In this document: piece by piece, positions 7,351 to 53,445 of the stretch
Numbering within the stretch: position 1 is the stretch's first letter
Layout of the letters: every line of letters starts with the position of its first letter
Virus record (IMG/VR): IMGVR_UViG_3300044568_003163
Span: 230,035-294,034 of that record
Reading direction: 5' to 3' (one strand)
Length of the DNA stretch: 64,000 bases
The notes under the pieces: generated by a model
Seen by the model: only the letters and a program-made list of their open reading frames with translations
Database searches by the model: none
What the model was told of the DNA's origin: nothing
Made by a program: the position numbers and the translations under genes

Positions 7351-7578
7351 TTATTGTTCGTTAGTAAAGAATTTTGTTACTTGGTCTAAGTTTTCGTTTG
7401 CTACTGAGATGTGGTCTTCTGCCCAATCATGTCCATTCTTTAAGATTTCGTCCATTTTAATAGGATCCATAGCTAAAAGAATTTCAACATTTCTTTTGAT
7501 GGTTTTAAGATTTCCAATTGTCATATAGTTTTCAGCCTTTTCGTTTACAAATTCACTGAATGTAGGTAAGTGTTCCAT
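7351..7578 (-). CDS. Putative internal head protein (CTS-like N-terminus)
   Basis: Starts MEHLPTFSEFVNE. Confidence 0.65.
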   Translation of the reverse strand: MEHLPTFSEFVNEKAENYMTIGNLKTIKRNVEILLAMDPIKMDEILKNGHDWAEDHISVANENLDQVTKFFTNEQ

Positions 7579-7986
7579 TTACTTCAATAATTTTCTAATA
7601 TTTTCAATAACTATTGATCGATGATTGATAACTGCCTGAGCTTCTTTAGGATGTCTTTGCATAAGTTTTATCGTTTCTCTTGCCCAATTTTCTATTTCCT
7701 TTGTTAGCTCAAGAGTTTTAGGCCAGGTTGAATCGTTAACGACATCAAAATCTGGATTACCTTCTAGTGATTCAATTCCAGTTTCTACGCTTTTATCGAT
7801 GTTCGACCAATATCCACCTCCTTTAGAACTTATGATAGTTCCAACTGATACTTTTACTTTTCTAGTTCCTCTGATATTTTTAACTTCAGTGTCTTTATTA
7901 GCAATATATACATTCCAATATTCTCCACCTTTATCTAAAAATGTAGATTCATTTAAGAATTCTTCGTATGTAGGTAGTTTACTCAT
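7579..7986 (-). CDS. Putative internal head protein (CTS-like N-terminus)
   Basis: Starts MSKLPTYEEFLNE. Confidence 0.65.
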   Translation of the reverse strand: MSKLPTYEEFLNESTFLDKGGEYWNVYIANKDTEVKNIRGTRKVKVSVGTIISSKGGGYWSNIDKSVETGIESLEGNPDFDVVNDSTWPKTLELTKEIENWARETIKLMQRHPKEAQAVINHRSIVIENIRKLLK

Positions 7987-9482
7987 TATTTCTTTGTTTT
8001 CTTATTTTCAAATGTTATTCCAGCATGTGCACTTCCTTTAGCTTCACCTGGATGATATTCACCATCAAATGAAGTTACTACGAAAGTTTTATATGGCGAT
8101 ACTGAACAACCAATTCTTTCCATAAATTTACGATTAACTAAAAATTTAGTAGATTTATCTGTTCTATTAACTAATGAAACCTGAACCTCTTTGTAAGTTT
8201 TACCTGCAAATGCAATATCCATTTCAATTATAGGCCTTTCATCTATATCGTTACCAACTTCTGCGTTAGAAATTCCAATTATCTGATGTACGTATTTTTT
8301 GCCGTTCAATTCCCAATTACACTGTTTACCATCTTCGCTAATTTTCATTTTATCATAAGTCATAGAACATGAAAGTGAACCGTTTCCAGTATCAAATTTA
8401 GCAACAACATCACCAATTCCAGGAATTGTAATTACTTCTCTAAATCCAATAACTCTACGAGAACGAATCCAATTTTGTCTATCTGATAGAAAATCGATGA
8501 TGTCTTTAATAACATCTACACCAGTAGCTTTTTTTAATCCTTGTGTACCTGGAGATGAGTTAACTTCCAGTACATAGTTTTTACCTGTTTTCTCATCAAC
8601 GATAATATCAACTCCACACCAATTACAACCTACTGCCTTAGCCGATTCGATTGCAATTCTTTCTTGTTCTGGTGTTAATTTAGTTTTTTCAACAGAACCA
8701 CCTAATGAATAGTTAGTTCTAAAGTCTTTATCGACTTTGTTTCTTCTCATATAACCTAAAAGTACCGAGTCAGTATCTTCTGGTTTAGGCGAATTGAAAC
8801 GTTTAGTTAAAACGTGAATACGTAAGTCATATTCTGATTCGATTTTTTCTTGTATAAGAGTTTCTACAGTTGGATCTACTTTCCATAAAGTTTGTAATAC
8901 TGATTTAAGAGATGCCAATGAATCTATAATAGAAACTCCAATTCCTTGAGAACCAGAAAGCATTTTAAGAATTACAGGAAATTGTCCGCCGATTTGTTCA
9001 ACTGCCGGTTCGATAGAATCTTCTCCATCGACCATTGCCATTTTAGGAACTGGAAGACCAGCATCCATAAGCATTTTCGAAGTAACGTATTTGTTTTCGC
9101 ATGCTAAAACTGAACTTAGTGTGTTTACTACAAAAAAGTTATTGTCTTCTAATTGAGATACAATATCTCGAGTATAAGTATTTCTAACGATTCCTCTACG
9201 AGTTAAAATCGCAGTATCTTCGGAATCAATTTTAAAGGGTTTCTTGGTTTTATCAACGATAGTAAAATAATCTCCATCAGTACTTTTAGTTAACGAACAT
9301 GTGTTAACGTCAATGATACGGAATTCAATTCCACGTTTTTTACATTCTTTCTCAACTGCAGGAACGGTATATGATTCCTCACTGATATTTGAAAGGAGTA
9401 CAACCTTAACAGGATTTTTAGGTGTTGATTTTGTAGCCTCATTAATTACAAATTCGTTAAAGTATGCGAGACGGTTTTTCAT
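7986..9482 (-). CDS. rimK: RimK-family ATP-grasp ligase fused to a RimB-like (retropepsin-type) protease, CTS-like N-terminus
   Basis: ATP-grasp motifs ENKYVTSKML, PVILK...GSQGIGV, LIQEKI, DLRIHV, GVDII and EVNSSPG; C-terminal domain with AKFDTGNG (Asp364). Confidence 0.85.
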   Translation of the reverse strand: MKNRLAYFNEFVINEATKSTPKNPVKVVLLSNISEESYTVPAVEKECKKRGIEFRIIDVNTCSLTKSTDGDYFTIVDKTKKPFKIDSEDTAILTRRGIVRNTYTRDIVSQLEDNNFFVVNTLSSVLACENKYVTSKMLMDAGLPVPKMAMVDGEDSIEPAVEQIGGQFPVILKMLSGSQGIGVSIIDSLASLKSVLQTLWKVDPTVETLIQEKIESEYDLRIHVLTKRFNSPKPEDTDSVLLGYMRRNKVDKDFRTNYSLGGSVEKTKLTPEQERIAIESAKAVGCNWCGVDIIVDEKTGKNYVLEVNSSPGTQGLKKATGVDVIKDIIDFLSDRQNWIRSRRVIGFREVITIPGIGDVVAKFDTGNGSLSCSMTYDKMKISEDGKQCNWELNGKKYVHQIIGISNAEVGNDIDERPIIEMDIAFAGKTYKEVQVSLVNRTDKSTKFLVNRKFMERIGCSVSPYKTFVVTSFDGEYHPGEAKGSAHAGITFENKKTKK

Positions 9483-9966
9483 TTTTGCGTATATATTTTA
9501 TGAATGATTTCTGATTATCTATCATCATTCTCTTACATTTTTCAGTAAAAGCTAATGAAGATTCAATAACTCGTTGGTCTATTTTTTCGTTACCTTTAAG
9601 GTAGTATTTAAAACATTTTTCACAAGTAAAATTACTTGGAATGTATGTATCTATTCGAGATTGAATCTCTTTATTGCAATAAGCACAGTTCCAATCAAAT
9701 ATCTTATACGAATCTTTTACTAATGAATAAGAAGATATGTCTTTTGACCCTGGTTGAACAAATGGCCTATTCAAATGAGATACTCTTATTCTTCCATCTT
9801 CGATCCTAAAGATGGCATTTATAAAAAGGTCATCATCAGCATATTTCTTAACTACTGGATTTTCCTTTAGTATTCGTTGATGCCTAGGTGGAAGTCCTTT
9901 AAGTACGATTCCATATTTAGTAGGAGTTTTACCTAAGTTCTGTCTTTTTATATGATAATTAGCCAT
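9457..9966 (-). CDS. Hypothetical protein with two CxxC motifs (Zn-binding)
   Basis: CAYC and CEKC. Confidence 0.6.
   Translation of the reverse strand: MANYHIKRQNLGKTPTKYGIVLKGLPPRHQRILKENPVVKKYADDDLFINAIFRIEDGRIRVSHLNRPFVQPGSKDISSYSLVKDSYKIFDWNCAYCNKEIQSRIDTYIPSNFTCEKCFKYYLKGNEKIDQRVIESSLAFTEKCKRMMIDNQKSFIKYIRKNEKPSRIL
9489..9497 (-). promoter_or_regulatory. Putative late promoter (AATATATAC) upstream of the RimK fusion
   Basis: Same 9-mer as upstream of the portal gene (18780-18788); 6 nt before the ATG, inside the end of the upstream ORF. Confidence 0.4.
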
Positions 9967-12748: not shown

Positions 12749-14371
12749 TTATACTAAAGAACCAAGAAGGTTAGACATAAATACACCTGAAGTGATATAC
12801 ATAGTTTCTGGTTTGAAACCTGCTTCAACTAAAGCGTATCTTGATTTAACAGCTACTTTAGGAGCCATAGTTCCTTCAGCAATTGTTTGTACTGATTCAG
12901 CCATTAAGTAAGGCATGAATACTAAACCTGGAGAGTTACCATCACCTTTACGTCCAACTAAGAAACGAGTATCGTTCCAAGCCATGTTAGGATCGTTGTA
13001 GATAGCAAGACCTGCAACAGTTCCAATTGGGTAAAGTGAACCACTCATTTGGTTAATAGTATTAGCCATAGGAGCAGGAACGAAACCAGCTATATCTTGT
13101 AGGGCAGAACATACTTGACCGTTTGTAACGATGAAAGTAGCTGGACCTCTACGACCTCTAATTGCAATAAGGTTAGCGATTGCAAGGATCTTAGACATAA
13201 TTTTTCTCTGACGAGTTGAAAGATTCTCAGAAGCTGAGTTTGTAACCTCAGAAGCAAGAATAGTTGCAGCTCTAAGAGTAGTATCTTGGATGTAAGCACC
13301 AAAGTTAGTTTGAGTGTTAGCAGATGTACCAGATACAACAATTGAAGTAGCACCAATGTTCAAGAAGAAGTTGATTCCTTGAGAGTTAACAACATTTTTG
13401 TGGTTAGTTTCTCCAAGAGCAAATAATCTAGAAAGGATGTTTTTGTTGATTGATTGAGTCAATTCATTGATAAGTACTGATTCTACTTGAGATACAGCAT
13501 CTACTCCGAATTGTTTCAAATCTTGAACTTGCTCTCTAGTAACAGCAGCTGCAACTTGGAAAGTTTTAGCTTCAACTGATTTGTTGAAAAGACTTAAGTT
13601 CATTACGTTGTCTGGAGTAGACTCACCTAAAGATCTAGAATATGGATCGTTAATATCATCTCCAGTATAATCGTTGTTAGTTAAAGCTTGACCTGAGAAT
13701 CCAGTGATGTGGTCTTCTAAAGCTTTTACTAATTCTACGTTTAATCCAGAAGTAGCACCAGTTACACCTGAGATACCTGAAGCACCTAAGATAGTAGTAA
13801 AAGTTGAAAGGATAGTAGCACCAGAAAGAGTACCTCTAACGTGGAAGATTGGATAACCATCTAAACGAGAAGATCCTACATAAGCAAGAGTAACTCCATT
13901 AGTTGAAGCAGAAGTTCCACCAACTACAAACGAAGGAACTGTAGCAGAACCATAGTTTACTTTGATTAATAATGGAGAATTTGTAGTAGAAGCAGTTTGA
14001 CCACCAGCATATACGAAGTCTAAGTAAGTTAATACTCCCATTGGACCAGGCATTGGTACAACAGGTACTAAGTCAAGACCAATAGTTTGAGCAGCAACTT
14101 GCATTGCTAATGGAAGAAGTGTGTGAGCTTTATCACCTGAACCAGCTTCTTGACCTGGGAAACCAGCTTGAGTACCTGGATCTCCAGGGAAACGAGTTGC
14201 ACCCATACCGTTTACAGAACCTAATTGAGCTAAGCTATTGTTTTCATACAATTCATGATAATGACAGTATTTAGACATCCACTCTACTCTATTACGCTCT
14301 TGAATTCCTGTAGTAGACTCAATGATTGGAGCCCATTTACCGAATATTTCTTGTTCGTTAATTAAATACAT
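12749..14371 (-). CDS. gp23: Major capsid protein (gp23-like)
   Basis: KWAPI, DLVPVVPMPGPMG, SVEAKT, VLINELTQSINK, GLVFMPY and PKVAVKSRYAL motifs; biased codon usage; strong terminator. Confidence 0.95.
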   Translation of the reverse strand: MYLINEQEIFGKWAPIIESTTGIQERNRVEWMSKYCHYHELYENNSLAQLGSVNGMGATRFPGDPGTQAGFPGQEAGSGDKAHTLLPLAMQVAAQTIGLDLVPVVPMPGPMGVLTYLDFVYAGGQTASTTNSPLLIKVNYGSATVPSFVVGGTSASTNGVTLAYVGSSRLDGYPIFHVRGTLSGATILSTFTTILGASGISGVTGATSGLNVELVKALEDHITGFSGQALTNNDYTGDDINDPYSRSLGESTPDNVMNLSLFNKSVEAKTFQVAAAVTREQVQDLKQFGVDAVSQVESVLINELTQSINKNILSRLFALGETNHKNVVNSQGINFFLNIGATSIVVSGTSANTQTNFGAYIQDTTLRAATILASEVTNSASENLSTRQRKIMSKILAIANLIAIRGRRGPATFIVTNGQVCSALQDIAGFVPAPMANTINQMSGSLYPIGTVAGLAIYNDPNMAWNDTRFLVGRKGDGNSPGLVFMPYLMAESVQTIAEGTMAPKVAVKSRYALVEAGFKPETMYITSGVFMSNLLGSLV

Positions 14372-14481: not shown

Positions 14482-15102
14482 TTATAATAAGTTAACCTTT
14501 TCTAAAGATTCTAAGTTAGATTCAATTCCGTCTATTAGATTCGATATTAAAGTTTCGTATTGTTTAACATATTCATCAGTTAATATAGAAGCTCTTTCTG
14601 GATTATTTGCAAACATACTCCAATCAATACCTGAAGGTTTTAATAAAGGAGAATTTTCATCTGCAGCCGGTTTAGAATTTACTGAACCTTTTCTCATTTC
14701 TAACCCAAAATCATTATACCAGAAAGTCATTGCATTTCTTACATCAGTTATGTCTAACCTTGGTTCTTTTGATCGGTTTAAATTAGGAGCAAGAGTTCCG
14801 TAATTTTGATGTTCTTTGACAATTACTTTACGAATTTTAATAAGTTTTGAATATCCCATCATTGGTGAATATTCGATACAAAAAAGAGCTTGACCCTTAG
14901 AATTGTAAAGTTGTACACTTTCATAAGAAGGAGCTGTTTGTATACCATATTTAGAAAATATTCTTTTCAAATCTTTTCCTAGAAAATCTTTTGTGATTTT
15001 CGAAACTTGTTTGGCTATATCTAATTGATTAGGTTCTAACGAAGCTTTTTCATTAAGAATGGATTCATTAATAAATTCAGCAAATGTTAATAAATTCTTC
15101 AT
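14482..15102 (-). CDS. Putative internal head protein (CTS-like N-terminus)
   Basis: Starts MKNLLTFAEFINESILNE; lies between the protease and capsid genes. Confidence 0.7.
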   Translation of the reverse strand: MKNLLTFAEFINESILNEKASLEPNQLDIAKQVSKITKDFLGKDLKRIFSKYGIQTAPSYESVQLYNSKGQALFCIEYSPMMGYSKLIKIRKVIVKEHQNYGTLAPNLNRSKEPRLDITDVRNAMTFWYNDFGLEMRKGSVNSKPAADENSPLLKPSGIDWSMFANNPERASILTDEYVKQYETLISNLIDGIESNLESLEKVNLL

Positions 15103-15173: not shown

Positions 15174-17087
15174 TTATCTGTTAAATCTTCTTCTTAATTC
15201 AGCTTCTACGGTTTCCATGTAATTAGCCGGAGTTTTATATTCTGCAGTTTCATTAACAATTGCTGGTGCAGCACCTTCATTTAATGGAGCATCAATTTTA
15301 ACTGATCTTAAATCTCTAGTAGCCCAGAAATCATCGATTTTATATTGATTATCTAAAACTTTTACTGAAGCTTGAGCCTTAATTGAATTTCTTTGAGATT
15401 CATTTAAGTTATTCCAAGAGTCTTTGTATTTAGCTGGCATATTAGTTAACCAATTTGTAACTGGTCTAAATGCAATAAATGCAGATTCATATAATCTTTC
15501 AGCATCAACTGAACCATAGAATTTGTTATTTTCAAAAACTGCAATAACTTCGTCTTTTTTCTCAGGAGTTAATGCATCAAATTGATTTCTCTTGTTTTCT
15601 GATAGGAAATTCAAGAAGTGTAATTTGTTAGCATCTACTGATTCATTAACAGTTTTTGCATTTTCTAAAATAGTATTTAATTTGTCGGTTAATGTCTTTT
15701 GGAAAGCATCTTCTTCATTACCTTCAATTTTATCTACGATAGTTCTTTTTGGATTTGAATGTAATACTAAGTTTTCGTCGATTGATTGAGTACCTTCTAA
15801 ACCAGTAACTTTACCTTCATTAATTTCTTTAACGATGTGATTAAGATAACCTGCAAGATTTTGTGTATTTTCTTTTAAGTACTCAGTATATTCAATGATT
15901 GATGATGTACCTTCAACAATATAATCGTTATGAGAAATTACATTATCTAATTGCTCATTCATATGTTGTTGATAAGCCCAACGTGAGTTAGATTCATTAG
16001 CAAGATATTTACTAAATTCAATATTTTGATCTGCCTTTTCTGCAACAACTTTAGTATATTCAATACCTCTATCGCTCATTTCAGCAACTAATTTAGTATA
16101 CTCAATTAAGTGGTCAACCGATTCAGAAAGTTTTTCTGAGTAGTTAATTCCTTGATTAGATTTTTCACCAACTAATTCTGCATAATTTTTAACTCTTTCA
16201 AGATTTTCAATGATATAATCATTATGAGAAATTAAGCCATCAACTGATTCTGCTAGTTTTTCAACATAAGAATTAATTTGATTAACTCTTTTTGCAGTTT
16301 CTTCGGTGTAACGTATCAATCCTTCATTAACAGATGAAGAATCTTTAGCTGATGATTCGGTTAAAGACTTTTTAAGATTTTCTACTTCGTTTTTAACATG
16401 TTTAGTATATTCGTTAAAATCTTCAACGGTAATGTATTTTTTAGGATCCATTTTGTCGTTTTTTGTTTCGTTTATTGGGTTTGGGGTTGGTTCTTCTTGT
16501 TGATAGATTAAAACAGGCATATCAGATTCGCTCAAATCAGACTCTATTTCATAGATCTGTGTTAATGAATCGTTGTCTAATCCAAAAGATTCGTTTACTC
16601 TTTTCAATTCGGCATTAGCAAATCCAGGATCTGCAACTAAATCGTAAGTAAACATTTTTTTAATTTTAACATGGCCATTAGATTCAACAACACCGGCAGC
16701 TCTAGAAGAAATATGAAGAGGTACACCAGCATCTACTAATGCCATTGCTTGTTTTCCAGCATCAGTATTAAGTAATCTGATTCTACCAGTAACTTTTTTG
16801 CTAGCTTTATCGTATTGAATGTCTTCAATAATATGTGAAGCATTCTTTAACGATATATCAAAAGATTTAGGGTGGTCAAGTTCTCCAAGAAGTTTATTAC
16901 CTTTAAGTTTTTCTTGTAAGTCTTGTATGTGTGGCATTAACTCAGCTTCATCGTAAATACGATTATTCTTGTTTCTAATGCCTATTTCGGTGAAAACACC
17001 TTCCAACACATATTTATCTCCATCCTTAGAAGATGTAAGATTTCCTTCCGATCTTTCTAATACAAGTAGATATTTATTATTGCTCAT
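15174..17087 (-). CDS. gp21: Prohead protease (gp21-like) fused to a scaffold-like repeat domain
   Basis: N-terminal RNKNNRIY, GELDHP (His), ISSRAAG (Ser) and TYDLVADPGF; long helical C-terminal extension. Confidence 0.9.
   Translation of the reverse strand: MSNNKYLLVLERSEGNLTSSKDGDKYVLEGVFTEIGIRNKNNRIYDEAELMPHIQDLQEKLKGNKLLGELDHPKSFDISLKNASHIIEDIQYDKASKKVTGRIRLLNTDAGKQAMALVDAGVPLHISSRAAGVVESNGHVKIKKMFTYDLVADPGFANAELKRVNESFGLDNDSLTQIYEIESDLSESDMPVLIYQQEEPTPNPINETKNDKMDPKKYITVEDFNEYTKHVKNEVENLKKSLTESSAKDSSSVNEGLIRYTEETAKRVNQINSYVEKLAESVDGLISHNDYIIENLERVKNYAELVGEKSNQGINYSEKLSESVDHLIEYTKLVAEMSDRGIEYTKVVAEKADQNIEFSKYLANESNSRWAYQQHMNEQLDNVISHNDYIVEGTSSIIEYTEYLKENTQNLAGYLNHIVKEINEGKVTGLEGTQSIDENLVLHSNPKRTIVDKIEGNEEDAFQKTLTDKLNTILENAKTVNESVDANKLHFLNFLSENKRNQFDALTPEKKDEVIAVFENNKFYGSVDAERLYESAFIAFRPVTNWLTNMPAKYKDSWNNLNESQRNSIKAQASVKVLDNQYKIDDFWATRDLRSVKIDAPLNEGAAPAIVNETAEYKTPANYMETVEAELRRRFNR
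15810..16313 (-). repeat. Twelve tandem 14-aa repeats in the scaffold domain
   Basis: Units such as SYVEKLAESVDGLI, NYSEKLSESVDHLI, EYTKLVAEMSDRGI and EYTKVVAEKADQNI; SHNDYI occurs twice. Confidence 0.85.
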
Positions 17088-17143: not shown

Positions 17144-18757
17144 TTACATTCCTGTTGCTTCGGCATCCTTTTTGGCTGCTTCTCTTCTTTCTACATCTTC
17201 GATGTCTTTTAGTTTCTTGTTAAGACGTAAATCGTCATTAGATAAACCTAAGAATCTTTGTATTAAGAATTCAGAAGCAAAGTATTTTACTTCGTTCATG
17301 TTTGCATCAGTATCAACAAGACCATCTTTCATCGAAGTTACGAAGTCTAATCTTTTCTGTAAGATTTCAATTTCTTTCATCTCTTCAAAGATGTTCATTG
17401 TGTTATATTTTACACCGATTTGGGCTTTAAACGCATCGTCTTCTTTTATTTCAGGAAAGTCTAAACACATTTGAATCCAAAGTGGTTTTGTAAGTATTTC
17501 TTGGAAAACTGAACGTAAACGAGTAACAAAACGTCCAAATTTAATCTCGTCTCTAGTCATACCCTCGGCATTCATTTCCCATGAAGGTGGGGATTCCATA
17601 TCAAAACGGGAAAGTGGAATTTTAGATACTTTAATTAATTTCTCTCTGAAGTATTTAAGAGCATCAGTATCTGAAAGGTCTGGACCATCGTTTCCAATAG
17701 TCTCTATTGTAGGTTCACCAGCATCACCTGATGGCAACCAATATTCTTTGTTAAATGGCATCATTGCTTTACCATTAACTTTTAATTCACCAGATTCAGT
17801 ATCAAAATCTATTTGCTCTCGGTAGTTTTGCATTAAAACTCCAAGAGATTGTTTTGCTCTAGTTTTTGATTTACCACCAACCGGAATTACAAATTTAGTT
17901 TTAAACGAAGCATTAACAGTAGCCCAAATAACTCTTGAGTGTTCCATAATTCTAAGTAAGTTAAAAGAACGAATAAGTCTTTCAACATAAGAAACTCGAT
18001 TTACAGTATTAACGTTAGCATAAGAGATGTAAATAACTTGAGAATCATAAACAACTCTTTCCTTATTTGGCATACCTTTAAATTGTTTCCAAATTTTCTT
18101 ACCTTCTTTATCGATTCCAGGTTCAAGATTTATTGGATCTAATTCTTTAAATCCTATAATTCTTGATTGTTCTTTGTCGTAAATTATCTCAAATGCAAGA
18201 TAACCATCAACTAACCATTTTCTAAAGTAAGACCAAGCGGCAATATCATTATTGAATCCAAAGTATTGATAGATTCTTTTAAAATTAGTATCTAAAGCGA
18301 TTTTAACTGCTTCTAATGTTGTAGGTTCTAATGTATCATCATCAAAAGATAATGGCATACAAAAGTAATTTTTATCATCATAAACTACACATTCATCACA
18401 AAGAGTATCAAGAATATCTTCTATCTCATCTTGGATAGCGAATTTTCTAAGGTCTTCTCTTTTCTTAGGATATGATTTATCAAAGATGGAAATTGATTTA
18501 CGAAGATTGATATCGGTCATCGATAGATTAGCGAAAAGTGCATAATCATCGTATTCTCCTCCAGCAACATTTCTCGGATCAAGTCTCCAACCATATTGGT
18601 CTTCGTTGATACCGATAGCTTTGGAATTCTTCAGCACCATATCATCATACATCATTCCAAAGGAAGATAATGATTTAAGTGCTTTGCTGACGATATTTCT
18701 CGAAGCCGGTGTTGGTTTACCGTTTGAGGTTTCGTCTCTATTTACAAATCCTGGCAT
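17144..18757 (-). CDS. gp20: Portal vertex protein (gp20-like)
   Basis: FRKWLVDG, LRIMEHSRVIW, EYWLP and ETI motifs; order portal-protease-capsid as in T4. Confidence 0.93.
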   Translation of the reverse strand: MPGFVNRDETSNGKPTPASRNIVSKALKSLSSFGMMYDDMVLKNSKAIGINEDQYGWRLDPRNVAGGEYDDYALFANLSMTDINLRKSISIFDKSYPKKREDLRKFAIQDEIEDILDTLCDECVVYDDKNYFCMPLSFDDDTLEPTTLEAVKIALDTNFKRIYQYFGFNNDIAAWSYFRKWLVDGYLAFEIIYDKEQSRIIGFKELDPINLEPGIDKEGKKIWKQFKGMPNKERVVYDSQVIYISYANVNTVNRVSYVERLIRSFNLLRIMEHSRVIWATVNASFKTKFVIPVGGKSKTRAKQSLGVLMQNYREQIDFDTESGELKVNGKAMMPFNKEYWLPSGDAGEPTIETIGNDGPDLSDTDALKYFREKLIKVSKIPLSRFDMESPPSWEMNAEGMTRDEIKFGRFVTRLRSVFQEILTKPLWIQMCLDFPEIKEDDAFKAQIGVKYNTMNIFEEMKEIEILQKRLDFVTSMKDGLVDTDANMNEVKYFASEFLIQRFLGLSNDDLRLNKKLKDIEDVERREAAKKDAEATGM

Positions 18758-18779
18758 AAGTTTATTATTATGGGTTTAA

Positions 18780-18788: not shown

Positions 18789-18801
18789 CGTGTTGAAATG
18801 A

Positions 18802-20018: not shown

Positions 20019-20026
20019 ATTTTAAT

Positions 20027-20770
20027 TTAGAATTTAGATTTAGCAGTAAACCAATAGATTTCAAAGCCTCCGTATTTCTCTCCCATACATAATACATTCA
20101 TTGTCGAATCAAAAGTTATATAATCATCTGCTTCTGCCTTTGGGAAATCCTTGATTTCCGCACCTCTAAATTTAGATTTCAACGCTTTATATGTGTCATA
20201 TAAATCATCGTCAAAATTTTCATCGAGACCAAATACATCTTTTGGTTCGGCTCCTAAATGTTTACATATTTCTCTTACTAATTCCTGTAACGGTTTGTCA
20301 TCACCTTTCTCATCAATATAAGTTTGAGCATCGAATTCTCCACTTAATTCAGCGATGGCTTTAGCAACACTTAGTTTACCTTCGTTAATCGTAGAAGAAC
20401 TAGAAGTTCTTACTAATCTACGAGAGTTTTTTTTAGAGGTAGAAACACCTTCTAAAACTTGTACAAAACCACCTTTAGCAATAACATCAGCAATTTCAAC
20501 ATCGGTCATCTGAACGTCATTAGCTTTGTCTTCACCATTAAATAAGTGAACTCCATCGGTTACACCTGCATAGTACATGTCAGTGTTAACGTTTCCATCT
20601 ACTGTGATAACATATTCTTTACCAGGTAACAATTCAGAAACTGAAGTTAAAGCTGGACCAGTTGGATCTTGTCCTGTAGTATTTTGTGGGTTGAATCCAT
20701 CAGCATCAGTAGCCTCCTGAATCTTGTAATGTTCGTTTACGAACTCGTCAAATGATAATAATTTTTTCAT
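20027..20770 (-). CDS. Putative internal head protein (CTS-like), two-domain
   Basis: Starts MKKLLSFDEFVNE; ends FTAKSKF like the neighbouring gene. Confidence 0.7.
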   Translation of the reverse strand: MKKLLSFDEFVNEHYKIQEATDADGFNPQNTTGQDPTGPALTSVSELLPGKEYVITVDGNVNTDMYYAGVTDGVHLFNGEDKANDVQMTDVEIADVIAKGGFVQVLEGVSTSKKNSRRLVRTSSSSTINEGKLSVAKAIAELSGEFDAQTYIDEKGDDKPLQELVREICKHLGAEPKDVFGLDENFDDDLYDTYKALKSKFRGAEIKDFPKAEADDYITFDSTMNVLCMGEKYGGFEIYWFTAKSKF

Positions 20771-20795: not shown

Positions 20796-21203
20796 TTATT
20801 TGATAAATTTAGATTTAGCAGTAAAGAAATAACTAATCATTCCATTATCTTCTGCTCTAACTACATTAGATTTTGTAAAATGATTTAAGTCTTCTCCCAT
20901 ACTGAAATCATTACTTGCAATAGATTTTGTTTCCGGAGTCATTCCGTTATATTCACTATCGATTTCATCAAAAAGCTGAACAAGATCGTCTTCCATTTCT
21001 TCTGAGCTTACCATAAAAATTTCAGTTGGTTTTGCTTTAAGAGCTTTAATTATTAAGTCGTATCCGTGATATTCACCTTCTATCTCTGTTATGTTCGGTA
21101 AATCTCTTGATTTTATAGCATCTTTGAAGAATGTTTCTTCATTTAGTGAGTTTAATTTGCTTGATTCATTTATAAATTCAGCAAAAGATAGTAAATTTTT
21201 CAT
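20796..21203 (-). CDS. Putative internal head protein (CTS-like), paralogue of the 20027..20770 C-domain
   Basis: Starts MKNLLSFAEFINE; ends FTAKSKFIK; late-motif variant at 21220-21229. Confidence 0.7.
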   Translation of the reverse strand: MKNLLSFAEFINESSKLNSLNEETFFKDAIKSRDLPNITEIEGEYHGYDLIIKALKAKPTEIFMVSSEEMEDDLVQLFDEIDSEYNGMTPETKSIASNDFSMGEDLNHFTKSNVVRAEDNGMISYFFTAKSKFIK

Positions 21204-21762: not shown

Positions 21763-22122
21763 TTAAACGGAATAAATACCTTCAGAATCACCATTACCTC
21801 CACTTAGAGAAATAGTTCCTTTGTATTTTCCTGGATGTAATTTATTCCATCCTTTTGCATATCCATTTTTTGCTATTTGAGTAAAATATGAAAATGCGTT
21901 TTTTGTTTTTTCTGGCTTAAATGATTTCCAGTATTTAAACAAATCCAAAAGGGCAAAAGCTATACAATCTTCTCTGTCCATCGGATCTTCATACGTTAAT
22001 CGTGTATTAGCTCGATAGGCAATTAAGATCAGCATTTCTTCTGCCTTCTTGGTTAATTTTTCTTGTTTTAAGGAAATGCATATTTCCTCGTAGAGTTCTT
22101 TTGGTTTTACGTAAATTGACAT
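21763..22122 (-). CDS. gp55: Late-transcription sigma factor (gp55-like), minimal
   Basis: YVKPKELY, DREDCI and FKPEKTKNAFSYFTQI (sigma region 2 core). Confidence 0.85.
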   Translation of the reverse strand: MSIYVKPKELYEEICISLKQEKLTKKAEEMLILIAYRANTRLTYEDPMDREDCIAFALLDLFKYWKSFKPEKTKNAFSYFTQIAKNGYAKGWNKLHPGKYKGTISLSGGNGDSEGIYSV

Positions 22123-42214: not shown

Positions 42215-42784
42215 TTACGATTCTTGAGCTATCATTGCATCAATAACGTCTGAGCAAATATATCCTTTTGCTTTAGCGAATTGTTTTGCTAATGCTAAAA
42301 CTTTCTTTTCTCCGGCAGAAGTTACTTCATTTTCCTTACCCATTTCATTATTATCATTCCATTCTTCAACGGAAGCTTCTACTTCTTGTTGTATTTGGAT
42401 GGCAGTTGGATTTTGTATTTTTGCAGATTTTTCGTGATAATCTTCCCAATAGTTTGCATCGAAACCTTCATTAACTGGTTTGTTGATTGTAGTTTTTAAA
42501 GTATCTAATTGTACTTTCAATTTTGGATCTAATCCTCTTTCGATACCCCAATTAAATGAAGCTTTAATTAGCATATGTAAAGGAATATCAGCATTTTTCT
42601 TACCGTAAGGAGAAGTTTTTAGCCAATTTAAGTAATGTTCTGCTAAGTCTACTGACATTTTGATGCCTTCTGCTCTAGAAGTATTACCTGCTATTATTTC
42701 TTCAAGTAGTGTTGCAGCTTTAACTCTAGCTTCGTTTAGCATCGATTCATTTACGAATTCTTCGTAGGTTGGGATGTGTTTCAT
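42215..42784 (-). CDS. Putative internal head protein (CTS-like)
   Basis: Starts MKHIPTYEEFVNESMLNE; internal PVNE site. Confidence 0.7.
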   Translation of the reverse strand: MKHIPTYEEFVNESMLNEARVKAATLLEEIIAGNTSRAEGIKMSVDLAEHYLNWLKTSPYGKKNADIPLHMLIKASFNWGIERGLDPKLKVQLDTLKTTINKPVNEGFDANYWEDYHEKSAKIQNPTAIQIQQEVEASVEEWNDNNEMGKENEVTSAGEKKVLALAKQFAKAKGYICSDVIDAMIAQES

Positions 42785-42785: not shown

Positions 42786-43448
42786 TTATTTGCAGTTGTA
42801 TATTGTTTTTTTGTATTGTCTAGCCATTTGATTGAAATGAGATTCTCTACCGTTATAAAAAGTAAGAGAATAACTTCCTGGTTTTAATTTTTTCTTTAAT
42901 GTATCGTAACCTAAAGTAGCGTAACAAACTACAATATTAGCTTGAGTTGTTATAGCTGCAAAAATACCAAATGTAGTTGCAGAGATGCCAGCAATTTTAA
43001 GGTTTTTATCGTCTGGATTTAATCCAAATGCTCCTGAAGCTCTAGCAAATCCATCTACGGAAACTTCACCAGAAACAAATCCCTTTTCTTTATGTAATTT
43101 AGTAAGACGCTTGATTTCGTCAAAAATTTCTTCTGCTTCTGTATCACTTATTGTAATGTCTTTAAGGGCCTCATTTAAAAAATTTTCATTTTCTAGAATT
43201 CCTTCTACTACTTGTGGCATACCATTATAGAATGCAGCATAAGTATTTCCCTTTTCGAAATATTTAGATAATTTATAAGATCCGTTTTTAGCACCTACCA
43301 CATAAACAGTTTCACCTCTTTCACTTTTCTTTGAAGCCTCTCGTTTTATGTTATCTAGGTCATTTGCTCGAACATTACCTGAACCAGCTAAAGGACCGAA
43401 TTCATTTAAGTTCTCATTAAGATATTCATCGAATGTCGTTAATTTCAT
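42786..43448 (-). CDS. Putative internal head protein (CTS-like)
   Basis: Starts MKLTTFDEYLNENLNE; internal FLNE site. Confidence 0.7.
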   Translation of the reverse strand: MKLTTFDEYLNENLNEFGPLAGSGNVRANDLDNIKREASKKSERGETVYVVGAKNGSYKLSKYFEKGNTYAAFYNGMPQVVEGILENENFLNEALKDITISDTEAEEIFDEIKRLTKLHKEKGFVSGEVSVDGFARASGAFGLNPDDKNLKIAGISATTFGIFAAITTQANIVVCYATLGYDTLKKKLKPGSYSLTFYNGRESHFNQMARQYKKTIYNCK

Positions 43449-43458: not shown

Positions 43459-43710
43459 TTATTTTGCGTAAGCTTTTTGGGTTTTACGTAATTTAGTTTG
43501 AATGTTGATAACGTTAATTTTAGCGTTTATTAATTCAAGTTGAACCTTAAACAGACCAATCTTTTCAGGATGTTCCTTTATAGATTTTTGTATCTTTGCG
43601 GCTGACATTTTTAATGCAGCAATAGAATCCGAAGTTTTTTGTTCAGGTGTTCTTCGATCTTCAGAAGCTTCGTTAAGATATTCATCGAATGATGGTATGT
43701 AATTAAGCAT
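43459..43710 (-). CDS. Putative internal head protein (CTS-like)
   Basis: Starts MLNYIPSFDEYLNE. Confidence 0.65.
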   Translation of the reverse strand: MLNYIPSFDEYLNEASEDRRTPEQKTSDSIAALKMSAAKIQKSIKEHPEKIGLFKVQLELINAKINVINIQTKLRKTQKAYAK

Positions 43711-43714: not shown

Positions 43715-44047
43715 TTAAATTGTTTTTCCTATTATTATTTTGCAATCTTGATCGAAATTTCGTTTCTCATCGTCAGGATATGAATTTGAAATAATTATCT
43801 TTCCATTTTCTCTTACTATGATATTATACGAGATTCCTTCTCCATAAGATATAAAACGATAAGTTTCTTCTCGATCTTCGTCTTTAGTCATGAATGCATT
43901 GATGTTCTTAGCATCTTTATTCTTTTTAGCAAATTTTTCTTTTGCCTCATCATCAGGACTCCAAGTCTTTTTGGCTAATTGAAGTCTTTCGATAGAATAC
44001 CTAACCTCGGCTTCATTAACAAAGTCACTGAATTTTTTAAGTTTCAT
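43715..44047 (-). CDS. Putative internal head protein (CTS-like)
   Basis: Starts MKLKKFSDFVNE. Confidence 0.65.
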   Translation of the reverse strand: MKLKKFSDFVNEAEVRYSIERLQLAKKTWSPDDEAKEKFAKKNKDAKNINAFMTKDEDREETYRFISYGEGISYNIIVRENGKIIISNSYPDDEKRNFDQDCKIIIGKTI

Positions 44048-45102
44048 TATAGCCCTAAGTCTCTTTTGGCCATCATGATAGCAACTTTATAATATTGAGC
44101 AGTTCCTTCGTCGGATGTAGAAGTAAGAGCTTTTGTAAGTTCTTTAATATTATCATTTCCATCAAATTTGAATTTAGTTAATGCATTTGCAGGAACTCTA
44201 AAGAAATCTGAAAGTCTAGAAATACATTCTTTTTTAATTTGTTCTTCCGGATATACAATTCTTGATTCAGAAATAACATCTTCATTTTCAGATTTATTCT
44301 GTAAAGCAATAAGATCGTTTATTTGTTTTCTTTTACCGTTAGTCAATTCAACTACTTTATGAGAGATTCCGTAATATTTCTTGTCTCCTGGAGAAAGTGA
44401 TTTATTCATACGAGATTTCATTGCAACTAATGCATCTTTGTCATCGCCAGTTTCTATAACGTTACCCATATCTCTACCTACAAAAATAGGAAATGAATTT
44501 CGAGTTCCAATAGATCCACCGGTTCTAACTAATGCAAATTGTTTAGATAAATCAACAGCACCTTCAAAAATAGGCTCAGTTTTTGATTCATTAATTGTAT
44601 TGAACTTAAAAAGTCCGATTGATTCTTTAACCATTTCGTTGGTAGTTTTTTTATTTTGTAAAATGTGTTGTAATACTCGTTTTCCGTAAATTGAAAGGGT
44701 TAATAAAGGCTTTCCTGCATTTTTAAATGATTGGAAATATTTTTCATTTCGATCAAACCATTGCTTTTGGTTGATAGTCTTTCCTCTATTCTTCGACAAA
44801 TCTAAAAAGAAATGGTCTAAGTCTTCTTTAGTTACGAACTGTGCACCTACAAATTCAATTACTTTGTCTCGTATAGGTGCTGAACTGTTTGCAAGTTTAG
44901 ATGCATATTGCCCGTATTTTCTTTTAATTTGTACTCTTTCTCCTATGTAATCTCCATAGTTTTCACTTATTGCAACAATGTCATTTATTCGAGTAAATTC
45001 ATCACCAGAATTAATAGTCACAACCGTACCTTCTTCTAAAAGTACTTTGATAGATTCTCTACAAATAAGAATTTCATTTAGAAAGTCTCTGGTAAAATTC
45101 AT
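44047..45102 (-). CDS. Hypothetical modular protein, putative virion cargo
   Basis: Starts MNFTRDFLNE; several internal hydrophobic-x-E sites; AATATATAA motif at 45118-45126. Confidence 0.65.
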   Translation of the reverse strand: MNFTRDFLNEILICRESIKVLLEEGTVVTINSGDEFTRINDIVAISENYGDYIGERVQIKRKYGQYASKLANSSAPIRDKVIEFVGAQFVTKEDLDHFFLDLSKNRGKTINQKQWFDRNEKYFQSFKNAGKPLLTLSIYGKRVLQHILQNKKTTNEMVKESIGLFKFNTINESKTEPIFEGAVDLSKQFALVRTGGSIGTRNSFPIFVGRDMGNVIETGDDKDALVAMKSRMNKSLSPGDKKYYGISHKVVELTNGKRKQINDLIALQNKSENEDVISESRIVYPEEQIKKECISRLSDFFRVPANALTKFKFDGNDNIKELTKALTSTSDEGTAQYYKVAIMMAKRDLGL

Positions 45103-51051: not shown

Positions 51052-51402
51052 TTAAACATCACCAAAATGTGATATTTTTTCATTCAGCTCTTCTGTTGTA
51101 TGACCGCATCTAGCATTTTTCTTTTTGTTTTCTCGCGCTTTTAGCATTTGTAAATTGCATGGATGTGCTAAGAAAAAAGGATCCATTTTATCTTTGAATC
51201 CTTGTGATATTGAATAGATGTGGTCTAAATGATTAGCTTTCCAGCTTCTCTTTAAATTTTTAGGATTAATGATATTTTTAAAAAGATCGTAATTTCTTTC
51301 CGTTAAAGCTCGGACAAATATAAAATAATCTTCTTTGTTGTCTAATAGCTCTTGATAATTATTTCGATATGTTTCAAAATTTATTAAATTAGGATTTAGC
51401 AT
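51052..51402 (-). CDS. Small HNH-like endonuclease domain protein
   Basis: HLDHIYS...NLQML...ENKKK pattern. Confidence 0.65.
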   Translation of the reverse strand: MLNPNLINFETYRNNYQELLDNKEDYFIFVRALTERNYDLFKNIINPKNLKRSWKANHLDHIYSISQGFKDKMDPFFLAHPCNLQMLKARENKKKNARCGHTTEELNEKISHFGDV

Positions 51403-51715
51403 CTTTTATTTTTTCATATTTATAATCTTCTCGTCTAATCATTTTCCAAAATCGAGTACCATAAGTTTTCATCTTTTCTCTGGAAAATAAATTTTGAACT
51501 CCACTAGTTAATGAATCAAGCTTAGTCTTTTCATCACCAAAAATTCTAAATACTCTAGGTGGTACATCAAAATAACGATAGACTGAACCATCCCAAAATT
51601 CAATTTCTAACTTTCTAGTTTCAGAATCATATTTGATGTTTTCTAAATGCGAAGAATCAACCGGCTTATTATACGCCGCTTCATTCAAGAAATCTTCGTA
51701 TTTCAAAAAGTTCAT
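51389..51715 (-). CDS. KTSC-domain protein with CTS-like N-terminus
   Basis: MNFLKYEDFLNE, then VDSSHLENIKYDSETRKLEIEFWDGSVYRYFDVP. Confidence 0.8.
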   Translation of the reverse strand: MNFLKYEDFLNEAAYNKPVDSSHLENIKYDSETRKLEIEFWDGSVYRYFDVPPRVFRIFGDEKTKLDSLTSGVQNLFSREKMKTYGTRFWKMIRREDYKYEKIKDAKS

Positions 51716-52042
51716 TTATGTAGTTCTATTTTTCTCGATCCAAGCTTTATAAACTTTGATTGCATCTCGCATACCTTCAGTTTGGTGTTCATGTTTAGCT
51801 GCTCTATTCATCATTGTAGTAGCTATCGACATAGCCCATTGGTGTTCGCCTTTCTTTTCTAATCCATCTAATTGCTTACAACTAGATTCGGCCTTTTCTT
51901 TATCGGCATATCCAGTTCCCTTTAAGGCTCTTCTACCACCTTTGCTATATAAACCAATATCCGGTGGATTTTTGTTTTCTTCGTCTAATTCAAAAGTTTC
52001 GAATATTTCAACGAATTCTGCGTAATTTAAGAATGTTTTCAT
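51716..52042 (-). CDS. Putative internal head protein (CTS-like)
   Basis: Start moved to MKTFLNYAEFVE (52042), 3 nt after late motif 52046-52054. Confidence 0.65.
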   Translation of the reverse strand: MKTFLNYAEFVEIFETFELDEENKNPPDIGLYSKGGRRALKGTGYADKEKAESSCKQLDGLEKKGEHQWAMSIATTMMNRAAKHEHQTEGMRDAIKVYKAWIEKNRTT

Positions 52043-52175: not shown

Positions 52176-52781
52176 CTACAATGAAACCCAAGACAGAGCA
52201 ATAGCATCAGTAATATCATCAATAGGTTTTGGTAGAGTAAATTCCTCTGCTCGATCAAGTCCTAATTCTACAAGTCTTAATTTGAAAGGAGTGTCTTTTA
52301 CTTCCAAGAACTTACGTAACATATCACATTTTGAAGCGTTTCCATTTCCAGTGTATATTTTCTTTAGAGACTTTGGTGGCACTACATCAATACAATGTCC
52401 ATAAATTTGAATCAATTTAACTTTTAGGAAAGTATTGAATGATACTAAATCAATAAAGGAATTTCCCTTAGAACCAAAAGAAAAACCTTCAATTCTAATT
52501 TGTGGAGTTTCTGAGATATAAGGATTTATTGCTTCTATTATTTGATCTGATAGATTATCGGCATTTTGAAGTTTTATTCGTTGATCAGCTAACGCATCTT
52601 TAGTGTTACCTCCTTTTTCATAAGAAATAACACTAATCATATCAGATAAAGCTTTATGCATTTTAGATCCAGCAAGCTCAGAACGATAATTAGGAACAAA
52701 AGAAAAGATAGTAAGTTCACCATCTTTGTTTATTGCTACGGCAGTGGAGTTTATAGAGAAGTCAATTCCTATTGTAGTCAT
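52176..52781 (-). CDS. ruvC: RuvC-like Holliday junction resolvase
   Basis: IGIDFS, IEGFSFG, PPKSLKK...GNGNASK and DDITDA. Confidence 0.8.
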   Translation of the reverse strand: MTTIGIDFSINSTAVAINKDGELTIFSFVPNYRSELAGSKMHKALSDMISVISYEKGGNTKDALADQRIKLQNADNLSDQIIEAINPYISETPQIRIEGFSFGSKGNSFIDLVSFNTFLKVKLIQIYGHCIDVVPPKSLKKIYTGNGNASKCDMLRKFLEVKDTPFKLRLVELGLDRAEEFTLPKPIDDITDAIALSWVSL

Positions 52782-52782
52782 A

Positions 52783-53145
52783 TTATATTTTTTTGCCTAA
52801 AGCAGCACCTAAAGCAGCACCTACTAAACGACTAGTTAACATATCAAAAACTACACCTTTCTCTATTCCTAGAACATTAGCAATAATTTTTCCGATCGAT
52901 GAACCTAAAGCAAATCCTGTAAGTCCTCCTAGGATAGATCCTAAAAATCCTTCATTTGTAAGTTCTTCATTAAGGTCTTTAATAGTTTTAGTGTCCATAT
53001 ATTCTTCGCAAAAAGCTTTGATTGCGGCATCTACCTTAGCTTCTTCTTCTGTCGTAAGTTCGGATTTTAAATTTTCATTAAGTTCTAATAATTCAGCTTC
53101 GGTAAATCTACCTTCCGATAAAAGATGTTCTTTAAATGTTTTCAT
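52783..53145 (-). CDS. CTS-like protein with C-terminal glycine-zipper hydrophobic peptide
   Basis: MKTFKEHLLSE, acidic pro-region, then GFLGSILGGLTGFALGSSIG...GAALGAALG. Confidence 0.7.
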   Translation of the reverse strand: MKTFKEHLLSEGRFTEAELLELNENLKSELTTEEEAKVDAAIKAFCEEYMDTKTIKDLNEELTNEGFLGSILGGLTGFALGSSIGKIIANVLGIEKGVVFDMLTSRLVGAALGAALGKKI

Positions 53146-53445
53146 TTAGTTTTTAAATTCTTTTAAAAGTGAATCTGCTAAATATCTAGCGTTTATTCTA
53201 AAAATTAATCCAGCTGCTACGTGATTTTTTTCCCATTCCATGCAATCTCTAAAAAAATCCATGTTATTAAAGTACTTTTCAATAAAAGATGCCATTTCTT
53301 CTTTAGGATAATTATCAACAGTTTTTCCATCTGGGATGAATTGAATATAAGATCCGGCATGGTCTTGATTACCTATCATAGTAAAGGTAAATCCACTAGA
53401 AGAAAATCTATTAGCTTCTAGTATAAGTTCGTTAAATGTTTTCAT
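53146..53445 (-). CDS. Putative internal head protein (CTS-like)
   Basis: Starts MKTFNELILE; upstream reads GATACATATACTATATG. Confidence 0.65.
   Translation of the reverse strand: MKTFNELILEANRFSSSGFTFTMIGNQDHAGSYIQFIPDGKTVDNYPKEEMASFIEKYFNNMDFFRDCMEWEKNHVAAGLIFRINARYLADSLLKEFKN

What the first reader, a model, noticed from the sequence alone, without database searches (positions are those of the whole stretch)
7351..53445. About 18 unrelated proteins share a T4 capsid-targeting-like N-terminal peptide: a large virion cargo programme
Seen: ORF starts at 7578 (MEHLPTFSEFVNE), 7986 (MSKLPTYEEFLNE), 9482 (MKNRLAYFNEFVINE), 15102, 20770, 21203, 21749, 22356, 24741, 25732, 42784, 43448, 43710, 44047, 51715, 52042, 53145 (MKTFKEHLLSE) and 53445 (MKTFNELILE) fit M-K-x-[FY]-x-[ED]-[FYW]-x-x-E. 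Most of the bodies that follow are unrelated. None of the replication enzymes has it, and several of these genes sit directly behind the late-promoter motif. Known: T4 internal proteins IPI/II/III carry a short N-terminal capsid targeting sequence (MKTYQEFIAE-type) that is removed by gp21 after hydrophobic-x-Glu, and they are injected with the DNA. Inference: this phage uses a portable address tag to package and inject a far larger and more diverse payload than T4, including enzymes.
Basis: partly seen in the sequence, partly recalled or inferred. Interest (0 to 1): 0.9.

Follow-up and report, generated by a model that had tools for sequence, protein, structure and literature searches.

The report
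Capsid address tag on many phage proteins
A huge T4-related phage puts the same 10 to 13 residue N-terminal peptide, a close match to phage T4's capsid targeting sequence, on about 18 unrelated proteins in this window and on well over 100 protein families in its relatives, so its packaged and probably injected proteins can be read from sequence.

Summary
Fourteen ORFs start with M-K-N-[LI]-x-[TS]-[FY]-x-[ED]-F-[LVI]-N-E, against 0.04 expected. The other four claimed ORFs carry family-specific, short or decayed versions, and 45102 is a nineteenth candidate.

The protein bodies are unrelated, and conservation is at the amino-acid level. The window is from a huge phage with a T4-type head module: Gp23 capsid protein, T4-type portal, and an S77 (gp21-family) prohead protease fused to a long helical repeat domain.

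Evidence that the peptide is a capsid-targeting propeptide:
- The four best-conserved tag positions are the four mapped in the T4 targeting sequence: Y4 and F7 for targeting, I8 and E10 for processing.
- A matrix trained only on relatives' tags ranks T4 IPII and IPIII first in 32 kb of T4 DNA, and the gp23 maturation site third.
- [LIV]-N-E also occurs invariantly at the end of the protease domain and at the capsid protein's N-terminus.
- Weaker tag-like units repeat in the protease's scaffold-like helix.

In 2.4 Mb of related contigs, 482 tagged ORFs fall into 147 body families, including Acb1, Tad3, an ADP-ribosyltransferase, NUDIX and a RimK-like ligase.

Packaging, cleavage and injection are inferred, not shown. 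I rate it a new variant of a known kind.

The parts
7351..7578 (-). tagged gene, 75 aa, long-form tag ending FVNE|K
   Evidence: 28.0 bits; orthologues tagged in L003, L005, L029
7579..7986 (-). tagged gene, 135 aa, long-form tag ending FLNE|S
   Evidence: 31.5 bits; no Pfam or PHROG family
7986..9482 (-). tagged RimK-like ATP-grasp ligase, 498 aa, variant tag YFNEFVINE|A
   Evidence: Pfam RimK 119 bits; the pre-ATP-grasp domain starts at residue 26; the variant tag is conserved in the 120 best homologues
14482..15102 (-). tagged gene, 206 aa, between protease and capsid gene
   Evidence: 28.8 bits; close relatives hold a tagged gene at this position, LR756500.1 holds none
20027..20770 (-). 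tagged gene, 247 aa
   Evidence: 29.6 bits; weak C-terminal paralogy with 20796-21203
20796..21203 (-). tagged gene, 135 aa
   Evidence: 28.5 bits
21225..21749 (-). tagged gene, 174 aa, true start at 21749
   Evidence: 25.5 bits; the same start is conserved in L002-L005
22135..22356 (-). tagged gene, 73 aa, tag ending WLNE|S
   Evidence: 25.1 bits
24064..24741 (-). tagged gene, 225 aa, tag ending FILE|S
   Evidence: 25.2 bits
24743..25732 (-). tagged gene, 329 aa, first gene behind a late-like promoter motif
   Evidence: 29.1 bits; 115 of 120 database homologues are tagged; the model shows the tag as a short helix at residues 7-14 followed by a disordered linker; motif 28 nt upstream
42215..42784 (-). 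tagged gene, 189 aa
   Evidence: 31.0 bits
42786..43448 (-). tagged gene, 220 aa
   Evidence: 22.0 bits; a second weak tag-like site starts at residue 84 (7.8 bits)
43459..43710 (-). tagged gene, 83 aa
   Evidence: 26.7 bits
43715..44047 (-). tagged gene, 110 aa
   Evidence: 27.0 bits
44047..45102 (-). candidate nineteenth tagged gene, 351 aa, short form ending FLNE|I
   Evidence: parts of it are homologous to proteins with short or long tags in L164, L170, L176; weak
51389..51715 (-). tagged KTSC-domain gene, 108 aa
   Evidence: 23.6 bits; the KTSC domain starts at residue 20
51716..52042 (-). gene with a decayed tag, 108 aa
   Evidence: -0.4 bits here, but orthologues in L175 and L190 have canonical tags; late-like motif 12 nt upstream
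52783..53145 (-). gene with a short, T4-length tag, 120 aa
   Evidence: orthologues start MKTF-x-[ED]-Y-L-x-E; 2.1 bits on the long-form matrix
53146..53445 (-). gene with a short tag ending LILE|A, 99 aa
   Evidence: 12.6 bits; a homologue in L181 has a canonical tag; late-like motif 14 nt upstream
15174..17087 (-). prohead protease (gp21 family) fused to a helical repeat (scaffold-like) domain, 637 aa
   Evidence: Peptidase_S77 47.8 bits, phrog_207; invariant V-N-E at residues 164-166; 6 of the 10 best internal tag-matrix hits lie in residues 260-500, p about 1e-9; the model has one helix spanning 253-423
12749..14371 (-). major capsid protein, Gp23 family; N-terminus has L-I-N-E and P-I-I-E|S
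   Evidence: Pfam Gp23 125 bits; L-I-N-E is kept behind a leader of variable length in 33 relatives
17144..18757 (-). T4-type portal protein
   Evidence: Portal_T4 245 bits; phrog_213
21763..22122 (-). late sigma factor (gp55-like), lying among the tagged genes
   Evidence: phrog_234, E 9e-12

Best explanation
The peptide is a capsid targeting and processing propeptide of the T4 kind. I infer four steps.
1. Late in infection each tagged protein is made with an N-terminal amphipathic helix. The two aromatic residues at -6 and -3 from the terminal Glu, together with the aliphatic residue at -2, form its hydrophobic face.
2. This helix binds the assembling prohead core. The core is built here from the long helical repeat domain fused to the prohead protease, whose roughly 14-residue units resemble weak copies of the tag. 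The protein is therefore enclosed when the Gp23-type shell closes.
3. The S77 protease then cuts after the Glu of [LIV]-N-E. This frees the mature protein inside the head and degrades the scaffold.
4. The cargo stays with the DNA and is delivered into the next host cell.

Shown: the motif, its position, its portability, its match to the T4 targeting sequence and to likely protease sites in the same phage, and the T4-type head genes. Inferred: binding to the core, cleavage, retention in the virion and ejection.
For: - Strict N-terminal position and enrichment.
- Both synonymous codons are used at every conserved position.
- The bodies are unrelated. There are 147 body clusters among 350 unique tagged proteins in 2.36 Mb of related contigs.
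- The tag sits about 10 residues ahead of complete Pfam domains: RimK, KTSC, NUDIX, P-loop kinase and nucleotidyltransferase.
- T4 ipII and ipIII, read from NC_000866, start MKTYQEFIAE. The T4 review maps targeting to residues 4 and 7, processing to residues 8 and 10, and cleavage to after L/I-X-E (PMC9026906). These are tag positions -6, -3, -2 and 0.
- The matrix trained on huge-phage tags scores the T4 targeting sequence at 21.1 bits. In 39,259 six-frame positions of T4 DNA its top two hits are ipII and ipIII. The third ends at Glu65 of gp23, the end of the 65-residue propeptide.
- The head genes are Peptidase_S77, Gp23 and Portal_T4.
- V-N-E is invariant at the end of the protease domain in 41 orthologues, and L-I-N-E is invariant at the capsid protein's N-terminus.
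- Tag-like units are enriched in the protease's helical extension.
- Cargo in relatives includes Acb1, Tad3, ART-PolyVal, NUDIX and pentapeptide proteins.
- A late-like motif is shared with the portal and protease genes, and a gp55-like sigma factor is present.
Against: - There is no virion proteome, N-terminal sequencing or expression data for this uncultured phage.
- The scaffold-repeat matches are weak, at most 5 bits.
- Most tagged genes lack a late-like motif of their own, and some clusters sit among replication genes.
- The mature proteins are not basic, unlike the T4 internal proteins.
- 16 of the 18 window proteins have no recognisable function, so host-directed roles rest on relatives.
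- The nearest GenBank relative, LR756500.1, shows no tag in 41 kb around its capsid gene.
Confidence: 0.72

Rival explanations
1. The tag does send proteins into the prohead and is cleaved. However, most of the proteins are internal structural or assembly components, such as an inner body, DNA-condensing proteins or auxiliary scaffold, and are not effectors injected to act on the host.
For: The tag resembles scaffold repeats. One tagged gene sits between the protease and capsid genes. Most window cargo has no known function. The phiKZ group packs abundant inner-body proteins (PMC13282480).
Against: Tagged families in relatives include Acb1, Tad3, an ADP-ribosyltransferase, NUDIX and a kinase. 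These make sense only in a host cell. The families are highly variable and occur in arrays, like accessory genes rather than core structure. The gene between protease and capsid is absent in LR756500.1.
Confidence: 0.14
2. The peptide is a propeptide or degron recognised by the phage protease or a host protease for timing or inactivation, or a localisation signal for another site. It has no role in encapsidation.
For: It ends in a protease-type site. Nothing here shows packaging directly.
Against: The residues beyond the cleavage site that are conserved are the ones that mediate targeting in T4. The prohead protease is expected to act inside proheads. There is no hydrophobic signal-peptide-like stretch.
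Confidence: 0.07
3. The shared N-terminus is a leftover of common descent, from one expanded gene family or a recombination hot spot, without a function of its own.
For: Some tagged proteins are paralogues. One body cluster has 60 members, and two weak pairs occur in the window. Shared 5' ends could promote recombination, as proposed for the T-even internal-protein loci.
Against: There are 147 unrelated body clusters with different Pfam folds. The tag stays conserved while the bodies diverge beyond recognition. 115 of 120 homologues of one family keep it. Its distance from the Met is fixed, with the Glu at residue 13 in 87 of 128 tags.
Confidence: 0.04
4. The conservation lies in the DNA or mRNA, as a translation-initiation enhancer or regulatory site, and not in the peptide.
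For: It lies directly after the start codon. Lys and Asn codons rich in A are common there.
Against: Both synonymous codons are used at each conserved residue in 222 tags with distinct DNA. Leu, Ser and Thr codons also vary. Short and long forms and the RimK variant keep the residues but not the spacing in bases.
Confidence: 0.03

Closest known systems
Capsid targeting sequence (CTS) of phage T4 internal proteins IPI, IPII and IPIII
   Same: It is N-terminal and about 10 residues long. It has the same pattern: aromatic, x, acidic, aromatic, aliphatic, x, Glu, then a small residue. It ends in a gp21-type site, is carried by unrelated mature proteins, and the phage has a gp21-family protease, Gp23 capsid and T4 portal. 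The short form here (MKTF-x-[ED]-Y-L-x-E) has the same length as the T4 sequence.
   Different: The main form is 13 residues and has Asn before the Glu. There are at least 18 carriers in 64 kb against three internal proteins in T4. Cargo includes enzymes of up to about 570 aa and is not basic. The scaffold is fused to the protease and carries tag-like repeats. The phage is a distant, uncultured huge phage whose capsid protein found only matches below 60% identity in the phage collection. No experiment has been done.
Hypervariable internal-protein loci of T-even phages with CTS-like sequences
   Same: Arrays of fast-evolving small genes share only the leader (review PMC9026906). Here too there are arrays, for example 14 tagged genes in 12.5 kb in L087.
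   Different: The scale differs: 147 body families in the sample. The loci are spread through the genome, and the clade is different.
Propeptide-bearing head and ejection proteins of phiKZ, 201phi2-1 and SPN3US, cleaved by gp175 or gp245
   Same: These are giant phages in which many head proteins are processed after Glu by a gp21 relative, and several are injected. The protease here also matches Peptidase_S80.
   Different: In those phages the propeptides are long and diverse, and only a minimal cleavage motif is shared. No short shared address peptide is described. Here one short peptide is reused.
T4 Alt and the polyvalent proteins of phages
   Same: Host-directed enzymes such as ADP-ribosyltransferases are delivered with the DNA. 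One tagged relative carries the ART-PolyVal domain.
   Different: Polyvalent proteins join many domains in one giant protein. Here each domain is a separate small protein with its own tag.
Cargo-loading peptides of encapsulins
   Same: A short portable peptide loads unrelated enzymes into an HK97-fold shell (my own knowledge, not tested here).
   Different: Encapsulin peptides are usually C-terminal, bind the shell directly and are not cleaved. There is no sequence similarity.

Membership tests
T4-type capsid targeting sequence | Located at the extreme N-terminus, directly after the Met, about 10 residues long | tested here: met
   The terminal Glu is at residue 13 in 87 of 128 distinct tags, with most others at 12-14. 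The short form is 10 residues.
T4-type capsid targeting sequence | Aromatic residues at the two positions that mediate targeting in T4 (residues 4 and 7 of IPIII) | tested here: met
   Position -6 is F or Y and position -3 is F in 110 of 128 tags. The T4 mapping is from PMC9026906. The T4 sequence scores 21.1 bits on the tag matrix.
T4-type capsid targeting sequence | Ends in the gp21 cleavage motif, aliphatic-x-Glu followed by a small residue | tested here: met
   [LVI]-N-E followed by S, A or N. The same site is invariant in the protease and the capsid protein.
T4-type capsid targeting sequence | The phage encodes a gp21-family prohead protease and a scaffolding core | tested here: met
   Peptidase_S77 scores 47.8 bits against a cut-off of 27. 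A long helical repeat domain is fused to it.
T4-type capsid targeting sequence | Portable: carried by mature proteins that are otherwise unrelated | tested here: met
T4-type capsid targeting sequence | Carriers are present in the virion with the leader removed | not testable with these tools
   The phage is uncultured and no proteome exists. The nearest cultured relative fetched, Tenacibaculum phage PTm1 (capsid 32% identical), lacks this tag in the 25 kb read, and its paper is not in the library.
T4-type capsid targeting sequence | The leader alone is sufficient to package a foreign protein | not testable with these tools
   Needs an experiment.
T4-type capsid targeting sequence | Common descent with the T4 leader, as opposed to convergence on the same protease and scaffold | tested here: inconclusive
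   The head genes are homologous and the short form is nearly the T4 leader. Ten residues cannot separate descent from convergence, and LR756500.1 shows none near its capsid gene.
Injected (ejection) proteins | Delivered into the host cell with the DNA | not testable with these tools
   The only support is indirect: Acb1, Tad3 and ART-PolyVal domains on tagged relatives.
phiKZ-type processed head proteins | Long, diverse propeptides with only a minimal [SAG]-x-E site and no shared address peptide | tested here: not met
   The leader here is short and shared, with an aliphatic residue at P3. The phiKZ description is from PMC9026906.

The most novel reading that the evidence does not exclude
A widespread clade of uncultured huge phages labels its whole packaged and injected protein set with one short peptide that is readable from sequence. 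The peptide works by mimicking a unit of the scaffold repeat fused to the prohead protease. The payload runs to dozens of proteins per genome and well over 100 families across the clade. It includes ready-made anti-CBASS and anti-Thoeris proteins and enzymes such as a RimK-type ligase, so counter-defence arrives before any phage gene is expressed.
Probability: 0.45. Interest if true: 0.85.

Novelty: new variant of a known kind. Interest (0 to 1): 0.7.

Why it matters
If the tag works as in T4, it gives a sequence-only way to list what a large group of uncultured huge phages carries into the cell. That kind of list normally needs virion proteomics of a cultured phage.

The list already contains known counter-defence proteins (Acb1, Tad3), an ADP-ribosyltransferase and many orphan families. 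The orphans therefore become candidates for new early-acting anti-defence or takeover functions.

It also shows that the T4 targeting rule, two aromatic residues followed by an aliphatic-x-Glu cut site, extends far beyond the T-even phages. It suggests a testable mechanism: the tag acts as a mimic of a scaffold repeat.

The peptide could also serve as a packaging handle in phage engineering.

Tried and rejected
- Megablast of 20 kb against GenBank phages found no match.
- PHROGs on ten tagged proteins gave one faint hit (phrog_16160, unknown function) on the 329-aa protein and nothing for the other nine. Pfam gave only RimK and KTSC.
- Sequence search of solved structures with four tagged proteins found nothing.
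- An AlphaFold model of the 329-aa tagged protein had mean pLDDT 65. A Foldseek search against PDB found nothing below E = 0.2, so its function stays unknown.
- I asked whether the cargo is basic like the T4 internal proteins. It is not: median pI is 7.1 against 5.8 for other proteins, p = 0.99.
- I looked for the tag in the nearest GenBank relative LR756500.1 (41 kb) and in Tenacibaculum phage PTm1 (25 kb). Neither has it. The PTm1 virion-proteome paper is not in the library.
- Literature searches linking capsid targeting with huge, jumbo or mega phages found nothing relevant. The paper on aquatic 'moraphages', possibly the same clade, does not mention an N-terminal motif.
- I could not count tags over the whole 294-kb source contig, because only pieces of up to about 21 kb can be fetched.
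- I considered 6968-7258 (ending FLNE|R at residue 17) as a further carrier and dropped it. It scores -1.9 bits and only near-identical orthologues were found.

Full report
**What the window is.** All called genes lie on the minus strand and G+C is about 32%. The window has no close DNA relative among GenBank phages.

Its capsid protein (12749-14371) is a Pfam Gp23 protein. The best GenBank match is the 462-kb uncultured huge phage LR756500.1 at 56% identity, followed by the Lak megaphages at 36%. In IMG/VR, 550 stretches encode relatives, and a 294-kb contig carries an identical copy.

The head module is T4-like:
- DNA end protector, 18802-19545
- head closure protein, 19542-20018
- T4-type portal, 17144-18757
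- prohead protease, 15174-17087
- capsid protein, 12749-14371

Replication, recombination and nucleotide genes are also T4-like: clamp loader, gp46/47-type nuclease, DnaB-type helicase, UvsX, UvsW, UvsY, primase, gp32, a split family-B polymerase, ribonucleotide reductase and dUTPase. A gp55-like late sigma factor lies at 21763-22122.

**The observation.**
- Fourteen fit aromatic-x-acidic-aromatic-aliphatic-x-Glu beginning at residue 6-8. Shuffled proteins give 0.037 such N-terminal hits, and the opposite strand gives one hit anywhere.
- From 128 distinct tags in relatives the consensus is M-K-N-[LI]-[KLP]-[TS]-[FY]-[ED]-[EQD]-F-[LVI]-N-E, followed by S, A or N. The Glu is at residue 13 in 87 of the 128.
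- A matrix built from relatives alone separates the 14 window tags (22-31.5 bits) from everything else.
- The bodies behind the tags do not match each other, apart from two weak pairs.
- Codons vary freely at the conserved residues.

**The four atypical cases are variants, not errors.**
- The RimK-like ligase family (9482) has its own conserved version. The aromatic block and the L-N-E|A site are kept, with one or two extra residues between them.
- 52042 is a decayed copy of a family whose orthologues have canonical tags.
- 53145 belongs to a family with a 10-residue form, MKTF-x-[ED]-Y-L-x-E.
- 53445 is a short variant whose one homologue found has a canonical tag.
- 44047-45102 is a further weak candidate.

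**Link to T4.** I read the T4 record rather than relying on memory. ipII and ipIII begin MKTYQEFIAE, ipI begins MKTFKEF, and gp24 begins MAKINELLRE.

The review PMC9026906 states four relevant points:
- gp21 cuts after L/I-X-E.
- The first ten residues of IPIII suffice for packaging.
- Targeting depends mainly on residues 4 and 7, and processing on residues 8 and 10.
- Foreign proteins fused to the leader are packaged and delivered.

Those four residues correspond to tag positions -6, -3, -2 and 0, the best-conserved ones here.

The matrix trained on huge-phage tags gives the T4 leader 21.1 bits. Over the 32 kb of T4 DNA held, in six frames, its two best core hits are ipII and ipIII. The third ends at Glu65 of gp23, which is the end of the 65-residue propeptide named in the review. 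So the tag matrix behaves as a detector of real gp21 substrates.

**Link to this phage's own head proteins.** The protease has an S77 domain.

In 41 orthologues the residues V-N-E directly after that domain are invariant. This is the same P3-P1 as in the tag. The protease's N-terminus has L-V-L-E|R-S, which resembles the site near the T4 gp21 N-terminus noted in the review.

The capsid protein begins with a leader of two to six variable residues, followed by invariant L-I-N-E and later P-I-I-E|S. This resembles the T4 gp24 leader.

Behind the protease domain come:
- a disordered linker;
- a region of roughly 14-residue units of the form I-x-Y-x-x-x-[LV]-A-E, whose number varies between orthologues, modelled as one helix spanning residues 253-423;
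- a conserved site, H-F-[LM]-N-F-L-[SG]-E.

Six of the ten best internal matches to the tag matrix in the whole window lie in this 1.3% of positions (p about 1e-9), although each match is weak. I read this domain as the scaffold, and the tag as a stronger copy of its repeat. That reading is inference.

In the 201 related loci held (2.36 Mb) there are 482 tagged ORFs. Of these, 350 are unique, and they fall into 147 body clusters. They often occur in arrays, for example 14 in 12.5 kb.

A Pfam census of one representative per cluster found single members with Acb1, Tad3, ART-PolyVal, NUDIX, Zeta-toxin-type kinase, pentapeptide repeats, cytidylyltransferase-like, PG_binding_1, AAA_5 and KTSC. Six of these were located. 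In the NUDIX, kinase and nucleotidyltransferase proteins the domain starts at profile position 1-2 near residue 23, that is, the tag plus a linker of about ten residues. RimK and KTSC in the window behave the same way.

For the 329-aa window protein, 115 of 120 database homologues keep the tag. Its model shows the tag as a short separate helix before a disordered linker.

**Expression.** The motif [AG]ATA[TC]ATA[ACT] lies 12-39 nt upstream of the portal gene, the protease gene and a few other genes. It also lies upstream of four tagged genes: 25732, 9482, 52042 and 53445. Replication genes instead have CATATAA.

The string from 25732 to the head genes runs in one direction with short gaps. This fits late, gp55-type transcription but does not prove it.

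**Verdict.** Packaging, cleavage and ejection remain inferences.

The concept is known from T4 and its close relatives. Four things are new: the distant huge-phage clade, the scale, the enzyme and counter-defence cargo, and the tag-like scaffold fused to the protease. I found no paper describing this.

Noticed in passing
window 54034-57171 (-): A 1045-aa protein next to the tail tube gene has a Hint/intein-type domain at residues 875-1021 (Intein_splicing, PT-HINT, AXH). It could be self-cleaving or could carry an intein.
   Followed up: no
window 33093-34286 and 39135-40520 (-): The family-B DNA polymerase is split into two genes about 5 kb apart: the exonuclease and N-terminal part upstream, the C-terminal part downstream. 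Ribonucleotide reductase, an FkbM-type methyltransferase and small ORFs lie between them.
   Followed up: no
window, upstream of 3959, 6145, 6706, 7258; of 5496, 34286, 35754, 36416, 40520, 41191; and of 17087, 18757, 25732: There appear to be three promoter-like motif classes. A long TATATTT[AG][CT]ATA...CTAATTAAAAC box lies 32 nt upstream of a few genes. CATATAA lies before replication genes. [AG]ATATATA[AC] lies before head genes and some tagged genes.
   Followed up: partly
tag codons at positions -4 and -3, 222 tags in the window and loci: Codon use at these two conserved residues is shifted towards GAG and TTC compared with the bodies of the same genes (p 1e-6 and 4e-17). The other conserved positions follow body usage. 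The cause is unknown.
   Followed up: no
L084 (Tenacibaculum phage PTm1) 18222-19916 and small ORFs at 9197-9886, 24580-24801, 24820-25014: The PTm1 protease is also fused to a repeat domain, but its units differ (W-I-x-x-x-[FY]-T-K-x-L-S-E). A few small ORFs there start with K-L-Y-x-x-I-S-E-N. This may be a lineage-specific tag that co-varies with its scaffold.
   Followed up: no
L001 (LR756500.1) 18046-21644: In this 462-kb relative the capsid gene follows the protease gene directly, and no canonical tag occurs in 41 kb. One ORF at 32486 starts MKFLETYENHIEE, a possible divergent form.
   Followed up: partly
window 42786-43448 (-), residues 84-94; window 1972-2325 (-), residue 15: There is a second, internal tag-like site (7.8 bits) inside one tagged protein. 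A motif match also starts at residue 15 of an untagged 117-aa protein.
   Followed up: no
window 19542-20018 (-): The head closure (gp4-like) protein also matches the Pfam TnsA-like endonuclease N-terminal domain (59 bits).
   Followed up: no
L087 1594-12176; L139; L158; L167: Related contigs hold runs of 7 to 14 consecutive tagged genes, far longer than the internal-protein loci of T-even phages.
   Followed up: partly
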